This document shows positions 10,478 to 42,763 of a DNA stretch of 64,000 nt, in pieces. The notes beneath the pieces were generated by a model. It was given only the letters and a program-made list of their open reading frames with translations, was not told the DNA's origin and ran no database searches. The position numbers and the translations under genes are program-made. The stretch lies in NCBI GenBank assembly GCA_026770705.1, contig JANJGN010000052.1, positions 3,658,001-3,722,000 of the forward strand, given 5' to 3'. How positions within the stretch are numbered: the first letter of the stretch is position 1; every line of letters starts with the position of its first letter. Source of the stretch: Isurus oxyrinchus (lineage: Eukaryota).

Positions 10478-10683
10478 CAGGACACAAAGGGTTAACAGTT
10501 CACCAACATCTCAAAACATGAGCTGCTCTGTCACTTTGATCCAACTTCCTTATTTTGAATCACAGAGACACATCCCCCCTTTCTAATTAAACACACAGAG
10601 GGAGCAGCACAGGAACAGGTCATTCAGCCCAAGCAGAGCGTGTGGGCAGTTCCTCCCCAGGTGAGCAGTTGGACAGGTCCTGG
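10478..10683 (+). promoter_or_regulatory. Gene D promoter and non-coding exon 1
   Basis: Same module; AACTTCCTTATTTT at 10543; donor GT at 10684. Confidence 0.65.
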
Positions 10684-11134
10684 GTAAGTAACAGAACAAT
10701 TGGAATTCACTTCCACCACCAACACCATCCTTTTTTTGATGTTGTGACTTTATAAAGACAGATTCCAATGATTGATGCCTTTGAAAGATTTCTACTGATT
10801 ATTGAGATCAGGGTGTGAGGCTCAGGTCTGTTGTACAGAACATCTTTCTAGCTCAAAGGATGAGGGAAGTGCAGGGACATGAGCTTTGGGACATCCTGAG
10901 GTGGTGAAAGGTGCTATAGAAATGCAAGTCCTTCATTGATTTATTTTTTTAAAGCTTTTTAACTCTCTGCGGAGCACCTATCATCCCACAGAGAACCAAA
11001 TTAGTCTGTGAAGACATTGTCTAAAAGCAGTTCTGATCTCTTGAGAGCTGTCGGACAAGAGGTGAGGTCTCATTAACTCCTTTCTCTTTCACAGTTTAAG
11101 AGTCAGAAGCTAAAGGAATATCTGGGAGTGGACA

Positions 11135-11174
11135 ATGATCGGGAAATCTTACTTCCTCCTGTCACTTCTCCAAG
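11135..11174 (+). CDS. Gene D leader exon MIGKSYFLLSLLQ
   Basis: Acceptor at 11093-11094, ATG 11135, donor GT at 11175, phase 1. Confidence 0.85.
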
Positions 11175-11254
11175 GTAATAACATCGTCAGCTTGGACAGA
11201 TTTATGGCTAATAGTCTTTGTAAAAGAACATTCTTATGGAGCTCTGATAGGGAA

Positions 11255-11526
11255 CCAAGACCTTTAGAGATTTAAAGAAATAAATTAAAATATTTGTCAT
11301 CAAAATAAAAGATTTTAAGCACATACATAAGACTACAATGACTGCTATAATAACTCCTAAAATTCCTAATTAACCTGACTCCCAGTTACACTCCCTTTAA
11401 GGCAACAGACCAAAAATAGATGTTAGATTTAAAACAAACTCAGCAAGTTAACACAATGCCCTGGACAGTGGAATTCCAAATGGATTTTCCCCAACTTCAG
11501 TTCTGTTGGATAGCAGGTTGTGCACA
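11255..11526 (+). mobile_element. Fragment of the LTR-like element found whole at 27231-28156
   Basis: Strong similarity to 27365-27650. Confidence 0.7.
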
Positions 11527-11744
11527 AACAGGGTCCTGAGGACCATCAGCCAATGTAGAATGAACTTGTCCACTCCTGTGTCCAGGATTCTCTTCCATCC
11601 ATTGTGATACCTTGTGGAGTTCCTTGTGTGTCCTGTAGATGGTCCAAACTGCAGCCACTGTGCCCCAGTGATGGAGGGGGTGGATATCGAGTCTAGTGGA
11701 TCTACGAACCATCCAGAGTTTAATATTGATATTTCTCTCCCCAG

Positions 11745-12122
11745 TTGGACTGTCACAAGAGTGGAAAGGTGACAGTCCCCGAGAGGTGACAGCGCAGGAA
11801 GGTTCATGTGTACAGATTCCATGTCATTACAGTTACTCATCACATTTGGTAAAGAAAACACATGTCGGAATCTGGTATATGAGGAGGTACATACAGAACA
11901 AATGGTCTAAATGGTCTATAGCCTTTCACTCCAAGGATCACAGTCACGAGTTACCACGGTTCCACCATCGGACACGGCTGTCTGGAGACCTGAAAGATGG
12001 CGACTGTTCCCTGATTATAAACAACATCAGACGGGAAGATGAAGGACCTTATTTTTTCAGAATAGAATTTGACAATGGTCCGAGCCATAACTATTACCCT
12101 GAAACCCAGCTTCAGGTTTCTG
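11745..12122 (+). CDS. Gene D V-set domain 1 (Siglec sialic-acid-binding type), open frame
   Basis: 378 bp, phase 1/1; EGSCVQIPC, GIWY, GDCSL (E-strand Cys) and GPYFFRIE with the essential F-strand Arg. Confidence 0.92.
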
Positions 12123-12384
12123 GTAAGTGCTGTGTTATAATTACTCAACAATTCACATCCAACACTCAATGGGAAATAATAGTGTTTGATTTGCTTGTTT
12201 TTTGGCCATGTTAACCAGCGTCACTATTTTTAATGATTTGTCTATTTCTGCTCCCAGATCCATGATCTTATTGTGTGTGATTGAATCCACATCATAGCTG
12301 TAACATAAACCGAGCTGAGGGGTGATGACACATCCCCCCTGAGTGAAGTGTCTCCTCCCCACTACACCTTCCACCCCTCACACT

Positions 12385-39532: not shown

Positions 39533-39781
39533 GGTAAACAGAACGTGCTGATTACTGAGCCCCGGAACACAACCAGAGACACAACTAGCGAGGGGGAGAC
39601 CCCAGCTCCCCGGGGTCTCTCTGAAGGTGCAGTGGGAGGCGATGCTGGACTTGGGAACCCCGACAAACCTGAAGAGTTTCTCTACGCCAATCCCCAAGTT
39701 TTGAGGGTGTCCAGTGGTGATGGGTCTGTCCACAGGGAAGAGGAGACGGAATTAGCACAGATCAGGTTCGAGCATAACTGA
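39533..39781 (+). CDS. Gene E terminal exon, copy a (degenerate motifs FLYANP, TELAQI)
   Basis: ctctgtAG acceptor; 249-bp open frame to TGA; AATAAA at 40314-40319. Confidence 0.8.
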   Translation, partial: GKQNVLITEPRNTTRDTTSEGETPAPRGLSEGAVGGDAGLGNPDKPEEFLYANPQVLRVSSGDGSVHREEETELAQIRFEHN

Positions 39782-39978
39782 ATGAGAAATGGGGAGTGGG
39801 AGTGAGGAGATATGGGTGTGGGGGTAGGGATTGAGATTCCTGGGAACAGGAAACAACCCACTGGGGGAGAGGGGGAGAGAGGGAGGAAGGGATGGAATTG
39901 GGCTGCGGTTGGTGTGGTTTGGAATGAAATGCTTCTCCAGAGAGGACTGGATGCTGAGCCATTGAGGAGTGAGATTCA

Positions 39979-40013
<35 letters not shown>

Positions 40014-40936
40014 TCTCTGTCTCTCTCTTTCTTTCTGTGTCAGTCTCTCATTCTCTATCTCTTGCTCCTCCTTTAAGATGACCGTTAATAACTGACTTTG
40101 TTGACTCAGCTGTTGGTCTCCTGTCCCTAATATCTCCTCATGTGCCTCAGAGTCAGGTGAAATGTGACTAACAATCCCCGGATGAGCCTTGGGACATTTT
40201 GCTACATTGAAGGTGCTATATAAATGCAAGTTGTTGCAGTAACTCTGATCTGCTTCGATTAACAATGGAACCACAGAGGTTCCTTCGACAGGGCGTGTGT
40301 GCAGCAGGGTCACAATAAATACATTGAGCTGTGAGATTTTTAATTCTTACATCGAATGTGGCTGTCACTGGTGATGTCCACATTGATGCCCATCTCTAAC
40401 TGCCCTTGAGAAGGTGGTGGTGAGCTGCCTTCTTCACCCGCTGCAGTGCATGTGGTGTAGGTACACCCACAGTGCTGTTAGAGAGGGAATTCCAGGATGT
40501 TAACCCAGCGACAGTGAAGGAACGGTGATATATTTCCAAGTCAGGATGGTGAGTGACTTGGAGGGGAACTTCCAGGTGGTGGTGTTCCCATGTGTCTGCT
40601 GTCCTTGTCCTTCTGGATGGTAGAGGTCGCGTATTTGGAAGGTGCTGTTGAAGGAGCCTTGCTGAGTTGCTGCAGTGCATCTTGTAGATGGTACACACAC
40701 TGCTGCCACTGTGTGTTCATGGTGGAGGGAGTGAATGTTTAATGTGGTGGATGTGGTATGGATCAATCGGGCTGCTTTGTCCTGGATGGTGTCGAGCGTC
40801 TTGATTCTGTGCTTTGTGCAGAGATGATTTAAAGAGAGAGTCCAGTCATTGGTGTAAGGTTACAGTGGGCTCTGTGTCTGTGCTGCACTGACTCTCTGCT
40901 ATATGATAACCACAGTGTGATATTTTGTTATTGCAG

Positions 40937-41018
40937 GAGAAAGACAGCGATGGAGGAGAGAGTTTCAGGGACCAGTGACATTGCATTGACCCTCAGTCCA
41001 CTCTCTGTGAAGCACCAG
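40937..41018 (+). CDS. Gene E cytoplasmic linker exon, copy b
   Basis: 82 bp; splice sites intact; one aa difference from copy a. Confidence 0.85.
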
Positions 41019-42514
41019 GTACAGGAGCTGTTTACACTCACTCCAAAGCTTCAATCTCAGTGTGTAGACAACATATGTCCCAGATTCCCAGCCCAGTTAC
41101 CCACTGATTTGTACCTGTGGAGTCAGCAATGGTTCAGTATCATGCTGTCTCTCTGTTATGACACAGCAACTGGTAAAGGCTGTTGCTTAAAATCCCAGAG
41201 GGAAACTTTAAACAGCTGTCGTAACCTGTATTTCCCAGTGGAATGTTTGAGATGCAGCTCTAAATTCAGGAATAAGACCACCAGTTCTCAAGATGATTTT
41301 ATATCAATCTAAATGAGACATTTATTAATTTTCACAAGTTAAACATATGCACATGGCTACAAACTAGTATTATCATAACTTTATAACAAATTCTCAAACT
41401 AATCTCCTCCAAGACAACCCATAGACTTTAAGCAGACACCAGGCAAAGCATTTTCACCTCACAAATTCCAAATGAGGTTCCTTTCACTTTGGTTCCTTTG
41501 CAGACAGGTGAAGGCTTACAGCTGCTTTGATGTTACAAGCCTCTGCTCTGCACACACAAAACTGCTCAAGTTATACCCAGCTCTTGAGTGTGAAGAAGAT
41601 GGAGATTGATGGGCTCTTGATTGGTAAGGGGATCAAAGGTTAGGAGAGAAGGTGGGAGAATGGGGTTTGTGAAACATATCAGCCATGTATGAATGGTGGA
41701 GCAGACTCGATGGACCGAATGGTCTAATTTCTCCTCCTATGTCTTATGGTCTTATGGCTTCTGTTTGAAGGTAAATTCGCAATGTATCATCAGGACCTTT
41801 GAACTCCATCTCTTCCAATAATAAATCCCCTTTCATCGTATCAATTTTATTAGTAATATAAACGTTGCTTGGTTTAAGATTTCACTCTCAGACTTTGAAT
41901 GTTTTATTTAAAAATGCAAATTACCACTTTACCTCTTTGTTTGCATCTCAAAACTACTATACATCAAAGCACACAGACTGGCTGTCTTTAATCCAATTTA
42001 AATACACACAGACACACACACAGACTAAACCTCTGTTTAAAAAGACAGTTTGCATTTATAATACAAACATTAATAGATTAATAACACTCTGTCTCTATCC
42101 CTCCTCTATCTCTCTCTCTCATCCTCTCTCTGATTACAAGGTTCATGTTATTGAGCCTCACACCAGGCACCTGAGTGCAGAATCCAAGCCGTCACTCACC
42201 AGAGCCATTACCGAGGGAGTGCGGGACTGACAGCGGGTCAGTACTGAAGGAGTGCTGCACTGTCGGAGGGTCAGTACTGAGGGAGTGCTGCACTGACAGA
42301 GAGTCAGTACTAAGGGAGCGCTGTCTTGTCGGAGGGTCAGCACTGAGGGAGTGCTGCACTGTTGGAGGGTCAGTACTGAGGGAGTGCTGCACTGCCATAG
42401 GTGGTGCCTTTTATCCGATAGGAGAGAGAGAATTAAACAAGTCTGCACAATAATTTAACCCTTTCAGTGCCAGTAAATGATGTGAGGATGTCTTCTGTTT
42501 CCATTTCTCTGTAG

Positions 42515-42763
42515 GGTAAACAGAACTTGCTGATTACTGAGCCCCGGAACACAACCAGAGATACAACTAGTGAGGGGGAGACCCCAGCTCCCCGGGATCT
42601 CTCTGAAGGTCCAGTAGGAGGCGATGTTGGACATGGGAACCCCAACAAACCCGACGAGCTTCTCTACGCCAACATCAACTTTTCAAAGCTGCCCGGCGGT
42701 GACAGGACTGTGCACAGGAGCGAGGACACGGAATACGCACAGATCAGGTTCCAGAAAAACTGA
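42515..42763 (+). CDS. Gene E terminal exon, copy b with ITIM (LLYANI) and ITSM-like motif (TEYAQI)
   Basis: 249 bp; ELLYANINF...EDTEYAQIRF matches the CD33-family ELHYASLNF...TEYSEV arrangement. Confidence 0.9.
   Translation, partial: GKQNLLITEPRNTTRDTTSEGETPAPRDLSEGPVGGDVGHGNPNKPDELLYANINFSKLPGGDRTVHRSEDTEYAQIRFQKN

What the first reader, a model, noticed from the sequence alone, without database searches (positions are those of the whole stretch)
10478..42763. Adjacent activating-type and inhibitory-type Siglec pair (paired receptors) in an apparently cartilaginous-fish genome
Seen in sequence: genes D and E share promoter, leader, V-V-C2 exons and intronic L2/CR1 insertions (11.5-17.0 kb vs 28.3-32.9 kb). 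They diverge completely at the membrane. D has a TM with an intramembrane Arg (ILHVILILGIRAVIFLVAVVITIAGVCVW, from 19167) and a tail of a few residues with no Tyr. E has a neutral TM and an ITIM+ITSM tail (LLYANI, TEYAQI). Established: this is the logic of the primate pairs Siglec-5/14 and Siglec-11/16, where a TM Arg/Lys recruits DAP12 and the partner recruits SHP-1/2. Inference: an independently evolved or very ancient paired-Siglec sialic-acid self/pathogen sensing system. I cannot confirm from the sequence alone that it is undescribed.
Basis: partly seen in the sequence, partly recalled or inferred. Interest (0 to 1): 0.92.

Follow-up and report, generated by a model that had tools for sequence, protein, structure and literature searches.

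The report
Shark Siglec activating/inhibitory gene pair
Two neighbouring shark genes for sialic-acid-sensor (Siglec-type) receptors share their outer parts, but one ends in an "activate" membrane anchor and the other in a "hold back" tail, as in the primate Siglec pairs; the activating copy is broken in this assembly, although almost identical intact transcripts exist in public runs.

Summary
Gene D (11.1-19.3 kb) and gene E (22.5-42.8 kb) are tandem paralogues. They share an identical leader, a common upstream region, V-V-C2 exons and the same intronic reverse-transcriptase fragment.

D ends in a 140-nt exon that encodes an Arg-containing transmembrane segment and a 12-residue tail without Tyr. 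E has a neutral transmembrane segment and a tail with LLYANI (ITIM) and TEYAQI (ITSM). The V domains are Siglec-type: the best solved-structure matches are sialoadhesin, Siglec-5, MAG and CD33, and the glycan-binding Arg aligns.

New here:
- In three RNA-like public runs the C2 exon is joined to the Arg-transmembrane exon across a GT..AG intron.
- Shark RefSeq models from four further species in three orders end in the same cassette.
- D is disabled in this assembly by a TGA in V2 and a 1-bp deletion in C2. Every laid contig lacks both lesions.
- The D and E V domains are not kept alike (77% and 84% amino-acid identity). The identity profile is a mosaic, which points to conversion tracts.

Adaptor binding, phosphatase recruitment and sialic-acid binding remain inferred.

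The scan has already found this family on other DNA of the same genome, and RefSeq auto-annotates it. I found no paper on it. It is a new member of a known kind.

The parts
10541..11134 (+). Upstream region of D shared with E. It includes a relic copy (10597-10683) of a cytoplasmic exon of the YxN-tail gene type.
   Evidence: 91.4% identical to 21930-22522. tblastn of P0014 residues 266-294 hits 10597-10683. Promoter function is not tested.
11135..11174 (+). D leader exon (MIGKSYFLLSLLQ, donor AAG|gtaata, leaves one base).
   Evidence: 40/40 identical to the E leader; matches the N-termini of shark RefSeq Siglec models.
11745..12122 (+). D V1 exon: Siglec-type V-set with the YFFRIE Arg, phase 1-1, open reading frame.
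   Evidence: Pfam V-set 1.6e-13 and Ig_CD22 7e-10; splice sites.
12343..13292 (+). Reverse-transcriptase fragment of a LINE in the V1-V2 intron, shared with E (29155-30104).
   Evidence: RVT_1 7e-09 and 5e-08; 96-99% identity between D and E.
15619..15984 (+). D V2 exon: V-set with an in-frame TGA at 15891-15893 (Arg codon AGA in E and in all laid contigs).
   Evidence: In one search, table 3, position 15891 reads T>A in all four runs.
16712..17007 (+). D C2-set exon, 296 nt. One base is missing after 16741, so the frame from the acceptor runs into a stop.
   Evidence: In one search, table 4, a C is put in behind 16741 in all four runs. Pfam C2-set_2 2.9e-09 on the downstream frame.
17333..17482 (+). 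Relic 3' half of an Ig exon (the type found whole at 156-560 and 1151-1549). It is skipped in transcripts. D/E homology ends just after it.
   Evidence: 94% identical to 352-521. The joint 17007>19167 skips it. A shorter relic lies in E at 33055-33120.
19167..19306 (+). Arg-transmembrane terminal coding exon (ILHVILILGIRAVIFLVAVVITIAGVCVW, then EEQTVKGSRQTV and a stop).
   Evidence: Spliced to C2 in runs X11, X17 and X18 (table 5). 96% identical to Carcharodon P0167/P0171. The same cassette is found in 12 shark proteins.
21930..22522 (+). Upstream region of E, with a relic cytoplasmic exon copy at 21986-22072.
22523..22562 (+). E leader exon (MIGKSYFLLSLLQ). A 6-kb intron follows.
   Evidence: It is the only leader copy between D's last exon and E's V1.
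28560..28934 (+). E V1 exon: Siglec-type V-set (YYFRIE).
   Evidence: Pfam V-set 7.6e-13. Best solved-structure hits are sialoadhesin 1.7e-14, Siglec-5, MAG and CD33, with Arg, Trp and Cys aligned.
31379..31747 (+). E V2 exon: a second V-set (YFFRIE) with an extra Cys (PSCLEN).
   Evidence: 95% identical to the V domain of the great white Arg-TM model P0167.
32561..32857 (+). E C2-set exon, intact, 297 nt.
   Evidence: 98.3% identical to D's C2.
34993..35268 (+). E Ig exon 4 (absent from D).
   Evidence: Pfam Ig_3 1.5e-12; phase 1-1; 84% identical to P0180.
36299..36592 (+). E Ig exon 5, membrane-proximal (absent from D).
   Evidence: 92% identical to great white P0157.
37513..37609 (+). E transmembrane exon with a neutral core (WTVGLFTTGIMLSVFLAGIFIFICV, then RK).
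   Evidence: 94% identical to P0157/P0200.
38333..38414 (+). E cytoplasmic exon 1 (RKTAMEERVSGTSDIALTPSPLSVKHQ), cassette A.
39533..39781 (+). E tail exon A: FLYANP (not an ITIM) and TELAQI (Tyr lost), then a stop. A possible internal donor lies after 39765 (AG|gttcga).
   Evidence: Great white models P0200/P0156 splice from this point into a second cassette.
40937..41018 (+). E cytoplasmic exon 1', cassette B. It belongs to the duplicate of 37718-38861, 94% identical.
42515..42763 (+). E tail exon B: LLYANI (ITIM) and TEYAQI (ITSM), then a stop.
   Evidence: 81% identical to Carcharodon and Cetorhinus tails.

Best explanation
D and E are neighbouring members of a large, elasmobranch-wide family of Siglec-type receptors. 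The family comes in 'activating-type' and 'inhibitory-type' versions.

Both genes encode a leader, two stacked sialic-acid-type V domains and a C2 domain. After a shared relic Ig exon their 3' halves differ.

E continues with two more Ig domains, a neutral transmembrane segment and cytoplasmic exons that end in an ITIM (LLYANI) and an ITSM (TEYAQI). By analogy with CD33-related Siglecs, these would be tyrosine-phosphorylated and recruit SHP-type phosphatases to damp signalling. This step is inferred.

D is spliced from C2 straight into a terminal exon that gives a transmembrane helix with a buried Arg and a 12-residue tail without signalling motifs. Such receptors signal only by pairing, through the charged residue, with an Asp-bearing ITAM adaptor of the DAP12 or FcR-gamma class. 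This step is also inferred, and the adaptor is unknown.

In the sequenced assembly D is a pseudogene or null allele (a nonsense codon in V2 and a frameshift in C2). So at this locus the pair is at present one working inhibitory gene plus a decayed activating partner. Intact, near-identical activating transcripts exist in related animals or at paralogous loci.

The V exons are exchanged among family members by conversion rather than kept identical within this pair.
For: Shown:
- Shared gene parts.
- Siglec-type V domains. The 17 best solved-structure matches are all Siglecs, and the Arg of YYFRIE aligns with the sialic-acid-binding Arg of sialoadhesin in YNFRFE. W6 and the C-x5-C plus DC Cys pattern also align.
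- All E exons are open and phase-compatible.
- The joint 17005>19165 (GT..AG, cut +2, i.e. 17007/19167) appears in three RNA-like runs from two organism codes and three studies. One contig (X18, record 26) spans V2, C2 and TM.
- The RefSeq models Carcharodon P0167/P0171/P0182, S. canicula P0179/P0195, S. torazame P0006/P0097 and Chiloscyllium P0017 join Ig exons to the same cassette. The Arg is invariant in 12 of 12 proteins plus the window.
- The cassette is also used by CD22-like, CEACAM5-like and sialoadhesin-like models in bamboo and epaulette sharks.
- On a V-domain tree, Arg-type and ITIM-type proteins interleave: 8 state changes for 10 against 21 rows. S. torazame P0006 (Arg) and P0158 (ITIM) are sisters for V1 (support 99) and fall in one starred clade (support 96) for V2. 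A single Arg clade is rejected, p-AU 6e-76.
- D's lesions.
Against: - No adaptor, phosphatase or glycan binding was tested or can be tested here.
- D is not intact in this assembly, so this locus may hold no working pair.
- The laid records are contigs from runs whose RNA nature is a guess. They differ from D by 1-3%, so they may come from an orthologue or a close paralogue rather than from D itself.
- The D and E V domains differ (77% and 84% amino-acid identity), so a shared ligand is not implied.
- Tail A of E, the first tail met by the transcript, lacks both working motifs. Use of tail B needs alternative or read-through splicing, which I did not test.
- The AU test mixes V1 and V2 positions, and the group was named after seeing a first tree.
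Confidence: 0.72

Rival explanations
1. D's two lesions are consensus errors of the assembly, or belong to one null allele of a polymorphic gene. On this reading the species has a working D, and this locus is a live activating/inhibitory pair.
For: All contigs of four runs show A at 15891 and an extra C after 16741, with other-letter depth equal to total depth (tables 3 and 4). A contig of run X11 matches D's C2 except for that C and one further base, and it keeps the two D-specific bases at 16762 and 16879. E and every homologue carry the intact state.
Against: Two independent disabling differences within 850 bp are unlikely as errors. One is a substitution, and the indel is not in a homopolymer. 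The laid runs carry other differences from the window (1-5%), so they may be another species or paralogue. Activating partners of paired receptors are often lost, as with the human SIGLEC16P and SIGLEC14-null alleles (PMC5701461, PMC4042635).
Confidence: 0.35
2. The Arg-transmembrane form is not an adaptor-coupled activator. It would be a decoy or ligand sink, or a receptor that pairs with some other membrane protein, and the Arg would serve assembly or retention only.
For: No adaptor was examined. The tail has no motif at all. The Atlas look-up of the cassette gave only a weak lead (score 0.75, a sodium-channel beta-subunit cluster).
Against: The whole helix, not only the Arg, is conserved across three shark orders: VILILGIRA.IF.V.V..T.AG.CV. 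That fits a specific intramembrane partner. From established knowledge of KIR, LILR, Siglec-14/15/16 and NKp46, a basic residue in the helix plus a short tail predicts DAP12 or FcR-gamma coupling.
Confidence: 0.12
3. The V domains no longer bind sialic acid. The family would then be a Siglec-derived set of receptors for proteins or pathogen ligands.
For: Fast V-domain turnover, dN/dS of 0.5-1.0 between copies, and mosaic conversion tracts. The nearest non-shark relatives carry mixed automatic names such as MAG-like, CD22-like and sialoadhesin.
Against: All four V exons keep the Arg in the (Y/F)FRIE motif, the N-terminal Trp and the Siglec Cys pattern. The same holds in dozens of elasmobranch homologues.
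Confidence: 0.12
4. D and E are the two haplotypes, or an assembly duplication, of one gene.
For: High identity over about 5 kb.
Against: Identity is 77-99% in a mosaic. The 3' halves are unrelated: an Arg-TM exon against two Ig exons, a neutral TM and tails. E's intron 1 is 6 kb against 0.6 kb in D. RefSeq models of both types coexist on single contigs in the great white shark.
Confidence: 0.01

Closest known systems
Human/primate paired Siglecs: Siglec-5/Siglec-14 and Siglec-11/Siglec-16
   Same: Adjacent genes with homologous lectin ectodomains. One has an ITIM plus a membrane-distal ITIM-like/ITSM tail. The other has a basic transmembrane residue (Arg in Siglec-14) and a short tail. The activating partner is prone to loss, as with SIGLEC14-null and SIGLEC16P (PMC4042635, PMC5701461).
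   Different: In primates, conversion keeps the first domains almost identical. Here V1 is 77% and V2 84% identical, and conversion tracts seem to come from other paralogues. The shark genes have two stacked V domains. The Arg-TM exon is a cassette shared with CD22-like and CEACAM-like receptors. DAP12 coupling is not shown. The activating forms probably arose independently (inference).
CD33-related Siglecs of mammals
   Same: A V-set with the conserved Arg, C2-set domains, and a tail with a proximal ITIM and a distal TxYxx(I/V) motif. From my own memory, as a lead only, the 'Y-A-x-(L/I)-N-F ... T-E-Y-(S/A)-(E/Q)-(V/I)' tail pattern resembles the CD33 and Siglec-5/7/9 tails.
   Different: Orthology is not established. 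Solved-structure bit scores are about equal for sialoadhesin (57), Siglec-5 (55), MAG (52) and CD33 (49). A paper on fish Siglecs states that fish genomes lack CD33-related Siglecs (PMC7226832, on teleosts).
RefSeq automatic models of shark and ray 'Siglec-10/12/13/14' and 'CD33-like' (e.g. XP_041037177 Carcharodon, XP_072409577 Chiloscyllium, XP_072326180 S. torazame)
   Same: The same family, with up to 96% protein identity per exon. The same Arg-TM cassette and the same ITIM/ITSM tails.
   Different: These are unreviewed predictions. The window is not identical to any of them (best 92-96% per exon), so it is another lamniform species or another paralogue.
Other paired Ig-type receptor families of non-mammals (teleost NITR and LITR, skate MDIR, Xenopus FcR-like; PMC2413239)
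   Same: Multigene clusters that mix ITIM-bearing members with charged-TM members, with fast birth and death of genes.
   Different: Those have non-Siglec ectodomains (own knowledge; not tested here).

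Membership tests
Siglec (I-type lectin) family | N-terminal V-set Ig domain followed by C2-set domains | tested here: met
   Pfam V-set 1.6e-13 and 7.6e-13, Ig_CD22 7e-10, and C2-set_2 2.9e-09 for exons of D and E.
Siglec (I-type lectin) family | Conserved Arg on the F strand that binds the sialic-acid carboxylate | tested here: met
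   HMMER alignment to sialoadhesin (1url/1od7) puts the R of 'yyfRief' on the R of 'ynfRfei'. The same holds for Siglec-5 'yffRve'. The Arg is present in all four V exons.
Siglec (I-type lectin) family | Siglec Cys pattern (two Cys in the B strand region, one in E) and the N-terminal aromatic residue | tested here: met
   'gsCvqipC' aligns with 'gsCllipC', 'gdCsl' with 'kvCnl', and W6 with W2 of sialoadhesin.
Siglec (I-type lectin) family | Sialic-acid-dependent ligand binding | not testable with these tools
   Needs glycan arrays or cell-binding assays with an Arg mutant.
CD33-related Siglec subfamily | Phylogenetic grouping with CD33-related Siglecs rather than Siglec-1, CD22, MAG or Siglec-15 | tested here: inconclusive
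   Solved-structure scores do not discriminate. The nearest non-elasmobranch relatives are auto-named MAG-like (gar), sialoadhesin (tinamou, mormyrid) and CD22-like/Siglec-10 (turtle). No reference mammalian sequences were on hand as ids, so no rooted tree was built.
CD33-related Siglec subfamily | Cytoplasmic proximal ITIM plus distal ITIM-like/ITSM motif | tested here: met
   Tail B: LLYANI, 18 residues between the motifs, then TEYAQI. Tail A fails both motifs (FLYANP, TELAQI).
Paired activating/inhibitory receptors | Neighbouring genes with homologous ectodomains and opposite membrane/tail modules | tested here: met
Paired activating/inhibitory receptors | Activating member: basic residue inside the TM helix and a short tail without motifs, expressed as part of the receptor | tested here: met
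   The Arg is the 11th of 29 hydrophobic-core residues, and the tail has 12 residues without Tyr. The C2>TM splice is seen in three runs and in RefSeq models.
Paired activating/inhibitory receptors | Both members intact in the genome | tested here: not met
   D has a TGA at 15891-15893 and a 1-bp deletion after 16741.
Paired activating/inhibitory receptors | Ligand-binding domains kept alike (as in Siglec-5/14) | tested here: not met
   V1 95/124 and V2 102/121 identical residues. dS is 0.155 in the V exons against about 2-3.5% divergence in the introns. The identity profile is a mosaic.
Paired activating/inhibitory receptors | Association of the charged TM with an ITAM adaptor, and of the ITIM with SHP-1/2 | not testable with these tools
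Needs co-immunoprecipitation.

The most novel reading that the evidence does not exclude
Elasmobranchs have a very large Siglec-type paired-receptor system that arose independently. One conserved Arg-transmembrane 'activating cassette' exon is shuffled among Siglec, CD22-like and CEACAM-like ectodomains. V exons are repeatedly exchanged between activating and inhibitory genes. Double V domains and tandem tail cassettes add further variety. This would amount to a germline-diversified sialoglycan and pathogen-mimicry sensing system at the base of jawed vertebrates. It would also overturn the view that fishes lack CD33-type inhibitory Siglecs.
Probability: 0.45. Interest if true: 0.7.

Novelty: new member of a known kind. 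Interest (0 to 1): 0.55.

Why it matters
Paired activating and inhibitory Siglecs are thought of as a primate or mammalian answer to pathogens that mimic host sialic acids. A paper on fish Siglecs states that fish genomes lack CD33-related inhibitory Siglecs (PMC7226832).

A transcribed Arg-transmembrane Siglec form beside ITIM/ITSM forms is found in sharks of three orders. This shows that the same receptor logic operates in the oldest living jawed-vertebrate lineage. It offers a natural system for asking three questions:
- How often do such pairs arise?
- How are lectin domains swapped between the two signalling types?
- Why do activating partners decay?

For this window the practical message is narrower. 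The pair is real, the inhibitory gene looks intact, and the activating copy is broken in the assembly.

Tried and rejected
- **Leader scan.** A rule-based scan for leader exons found nothing useful. The leaders were found only through homologues.
- **ORF at 38229-38705.** It looks like a 'TM' (VIGVRLQWALCLCC...), but it is intron read-through upstream of cytoplasmic exon 1. The true neutral TM exon is 37513-37609.
- **Haplotype or assembly duplicate.** Rejected.
- **The look-up of encoding contigs.** It was closed, so synteny with the great white shark contigs could not be read.
- **Atlas look-up of the Arg-TM cassette.** It gave only a sub-threshold lead (0.75).
- **Pfam.** No family for the TM or tail exons.
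- **Earlier findings by sequence.** Blank.
- **Literature.** Five searches found no paper on shark Siglec pairs and none on DAP12 or FcR-gamma in sharks.
- **Joined spliced protein.** Exons were searched one by one by reference, and RefSeq homologues served as full-length proxies.
- **Tree with mammalian reference Siglecs.** Not built, for lack of those sequences as session ids.

Full report
**What is there.**
The window has five N runs, none inside 10478-42763. Self-comparison shows a tandem duplication:
- 11523-13339 matches 28337-30152 (94.3%).
- 14770-16426 matches 30530-32190 (92.4%).
- 16467-17032 matches 32314-32882 (93.1%).
- An upstream block, 10541-11254, matches 21930-22642 (91.9%).

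Stop-to-stop ORFs and Pfam identify the coding exons as V-set, C2-set and Ig domains. I used shark homologues found with the E V1 exon as tblastn guides and read the splice sites and phases. This gives two gene models.

Gene D:
- Leader 11135-11174.
- V1 11745-12122.
- V2 15619-15984.
- C2 16712-17007.
- A relic half Ig exon 17333-17482.
- A terminal coding exon 19167-19306.

Gene E:
- Leader 22523-22562.
- V1 28560-28934.
- V2 31379-31747.
- C2 32561-32857.
- A shorter relic 33055-33120.
- Ig4 34993-35268 and Ig5 36299-36592.
- TM 37513-37609.
- Cytoplasmic exon 38333-38414 and tail A 39533-39781.
- A duplicated cassette: 40937-41018 and tail B 42515-42763.

Exons were searched by reference, and RefSeq homologues stood in for full-length proteins.

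- The two leaders are identical, 40 of 40.
- Both V1-V2 introns hold the same reverse-transcriptase fragment.
- The exon at 19167 follows a good acceptor. In phase 1 it reads SGGEILHVILILGIRAVIFLVAVVITIAGVCVWEEQTVKGSRQTV*. This is an Arg inside a 29-residue hydrophobic core, then a 12-residue tail without Tyr.
- E's TM core has no charged residue, and tail B carries LLYANI and TEYAQI.

One correction: E's TM exon is at 37513-37609. The ORF at 38229 is intron read-through before cytoplasmic exon 1.

**Family.**
The E V1 exon matches solved Siglec V domains first. The hits are sialoadhesin 1.7e-14, Siglec-5 5e-14, MAG 5e-13 and CD33/Siglec-7/-8/-10 around 1e-11, ahead of the first non-Siglec hit (JAML, 1e-08). 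The alignments place the Arg of YYFRIE on the glycan-binding Arg of sialoadhesin and Siglec-5. The N-terminal Trp and the Siglec Cys pattern also align.

The scores do not separate CD33-related Siglecs from Siglec-1 or MAG, so the subfamily is open.

The nearest proteins are RefSeq predictions from sharks and rays. They are auto-named Siglec-10/12/13/14, CD33-like or MAG-like, in at least 20 elasmobranch species. The best per-exon identities, 92-96%, are to Carcharodon, with Cetorhinus also high on some exons. So the window is from a lamniform shark, but it is not identical to any model found.

**Is the Arg exon part of a receptor?**
Yes. I laid contigs of four public runs on 13401-19400. A joint 17005>19165 appears, skipping 2159 bases, with GT..AG ends and 'cut +2', which places it at 17007/19167. 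It is seen in three runs guessed to be RNA (X11, X17, X18), from two organism codes and three studies. One X18 contig covers V2, C2 and the TM exon in a single piece (tables 5 and 8). The relic Ig exon is skipped.

RefSeq models agree. Great white P0167, P0171 and P0182 read ...TVQDSGGEILHVI(Q/L)ILGIRAVIFLVAVVITIAGVCVWEGQT.... The same holds for S. canicula P0179/P0195, S. torazame P0006/P0097 and Chiloscyllium P0017. The Arg and most of the helix are invariant across Lamniformes, Carcharhiniformes and Orectolobiformes.

The cassette also ends CD22-like, CEACAM5-like and sialoadhesin-like models in bamboo and epaulette sharks.

**D is broken here.**
In this assembly V2 carries TGA at 15891-15893, where E and all homologues have AGA. 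C2 lacks one base after 16741, so the frame from its acceptor stops after 19 codons.

All four laid runs show A at 15891 and an extra C after 16741, with no contig supporting the window's state (tables 3 and 4). An X11 contig over C2 differs from D only by that C and one further base, and it keeps D's private bases at 16762 and 16879. So an intact D-type gene exists in a very close relative, individual or paralogue.

I cannot tell whether the window's lesions are a fixed pseudogene, a null allele or consensus errors. Also, the laid runs differ from the window by 1-5% elsewhere.

**How 'paired' is the pair?**
Less than in primates.
- Amino-acid identity between D and E is 95/124 in V1, 102/121 in V2 and 85/88 in C2.
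- Synonymous divergence in the V exons is 0.155-0.157, against 0.014 in C2 and 2-3.5% divergence in the adjacent introns.
- A 150-bp identity profile is a mosaic. The end of intron 1 plus the 5' two thirds of V1 (11523-11972) is 81-87% identical. From 11973 to 13339 it is 96-99%. From 16120 to 16569 it is 77-89%. C2 is 96-99%.

The low-identity tract includes non-coding sequence. It therefore reflects a different history, either conversion from other paralogues or partial homogenisation, and not selection on the loops alone.

The V-domain tree points the same way (77 rows). Arg-type and ITIM-type proteins interleave, with 8 changes of state for 10 against 21 rows. S. torazame P0006 (Arg) and P0158 (ITIM) are sisters for V1 (support 99), and their V2-type domains fall in one starred clade (support 96). 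Window E_V2 is 95% identical to the V domain of great white Arg-type P0167, while D_V2 is closest (92%) to ITIM-type P0156. A single clade of Arg-type V domains is rejected (p-AU 6e-76). Two caveats apply: V1 and V2 positions are mixed in that test, and the group was named after a first look at the tree.

D/E homology ends just after the shared relic Ig exon. So the two 3' halves were joined by recombination at that exon (inference).

**Mechanism (inferred).**
E would bind sialylated ligands through one or both V domains. After Tyr phosphorylation of LLYANI and TEYAQI it would recruit SHP-type phosphatases.

Tail A, which the transcript meets first, has neither motif (FLYANP, TELAQI). Use of tail B therefore requires skipping cassette A or splicing from a weak internal donor after 39765 into 40937, as the great white models P0200 and P0156 do. 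I did not test this.

D-type receptors would need an Asp-bearing ITAM adaptor. The Arg lies in the outer third of the helix within '(I/V)R(A/M)G'-like surroundings. From my own knowledge this recalls FcR-gamma partners such as OSCAR, PIR-A and NKp46 as much as DAP12 partners. No adaptor sequence was available to test this.

**What is known.**
- Primate Siglec-5/14 and Siglec-11/16 are the closest described systems (PMC4042635, PMC5701461).
- A paper on fish Siglecs says fishes regularly have only Siglec-1, CD22, MAG and Siglec-15 and lack CD33-related inhibitory Siglecs (PMC7226832). That statement concerns teleosts.
- The whale shark genome paper lists Siglecs only among the Ig-domain gene families counted in its jawed-vertebrate ancestor analysis (PMC8455134).
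- Five literature searches found no description of shark paired Siglecs.
- RefSeq auto-annotation already contains both types.
- This scan has noted the same family on many other windows of this genome, including follow-ups that reached the same reading.

**Verdict.**
This is a real adjacent activating-type and inhibitory-type Siglec gene pair in a shark, belonging to a large elasmobranch family. The activating copy is disabled in this assembly, and the lectin domains have diverged through mosaic exchange. It is a new member of a known kind, of moderate interest.

Noticed in passing
window 37718-38861 and 40325-41470; tails at 39533-39781 and 42515-42763: E has two tandem cytoplasmic cassettes (94% identical duplication). 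Tail A has lost both Tyr motifs and tail B keeps the ITIM and ITSM. An AG|gttcga site after 39765 is phase-compatible with 40937, and great white models P0200/P0156 read through both cassettes.
   Followed up: partly
window 3573-3665, 8358-8450, 10597-10683, 21986-22072: A copy of a cytoplasmic exon of the YxN-tail gene type lies about 540 bp upstream of each of the three leader exons, and the original lies at 3573-3665 in the upstream gene. The duplicated unit therefore ran from the 3' end of one gene into the 5' end of the next. At least one RefSeq model (Cetorhinus P0175) appears to read through such a junction.
   Followed up: partly
window 8894-8933: An orphan leader exon (MIRKSYFLLSLLQ, good donor) with its upstream block (8245-9540, 88% identical to the D and E upstream blocks). 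No V exon lies between it and D's own leader.
   Followed up: no
window 156-560, 1151-1549, 2715-2816, 3573-3665, 5299-5412: The 3' part of an upstream family member: two Ig exons (96% identical to each other), a neutral TM (GRDSNEWKAGLLGAGICLSVGLSGFFIFKCVRK) and a tail of the YxN type, as in great white P0014. A 24-bp minisatellite (4411-5200) lies in its last intron.
   Followed up: partly
window 58240-58647 and 58598-59107: A distant V-like exon (about 30% identical to the family; SCVVIPC and NCSV Cys pattern; weak Ig_CD22 hit). Its ORF ends before the FR.E motif, next to ORFs that look by eye like retroelement gag/protease. It is possibly a V exon interrupted by an insertion.
   Followed up: no
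window 10135-10316, 20650-21710, 39000-39390, 42206-42400, 52543-52895: The same roughly 33-bp tandem repeat (it reads ...LTVQHSLSTDP... in one frame) occurs in both orientations in several introns and intergenic stretches of the cluster.
   Followed up: no
proteins P0232, P0235, P0238, P0247 (skates): Skate Siglec-like models end in '...SWKCIVALIVLAVIF...CCRNK', with a Lys at the outer edge of the helix and a 3-residue tail. Their V domains are sister to an ITIM-type skate protein (support 97). This may be a second, batoid activating-type anchor.
   Followed up: no
window 19272: All four laid runs read G instead of A. This changes the juxtamembrane WEEQ to WEGQ, the state in the great white shark models.
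   Followed up: yes
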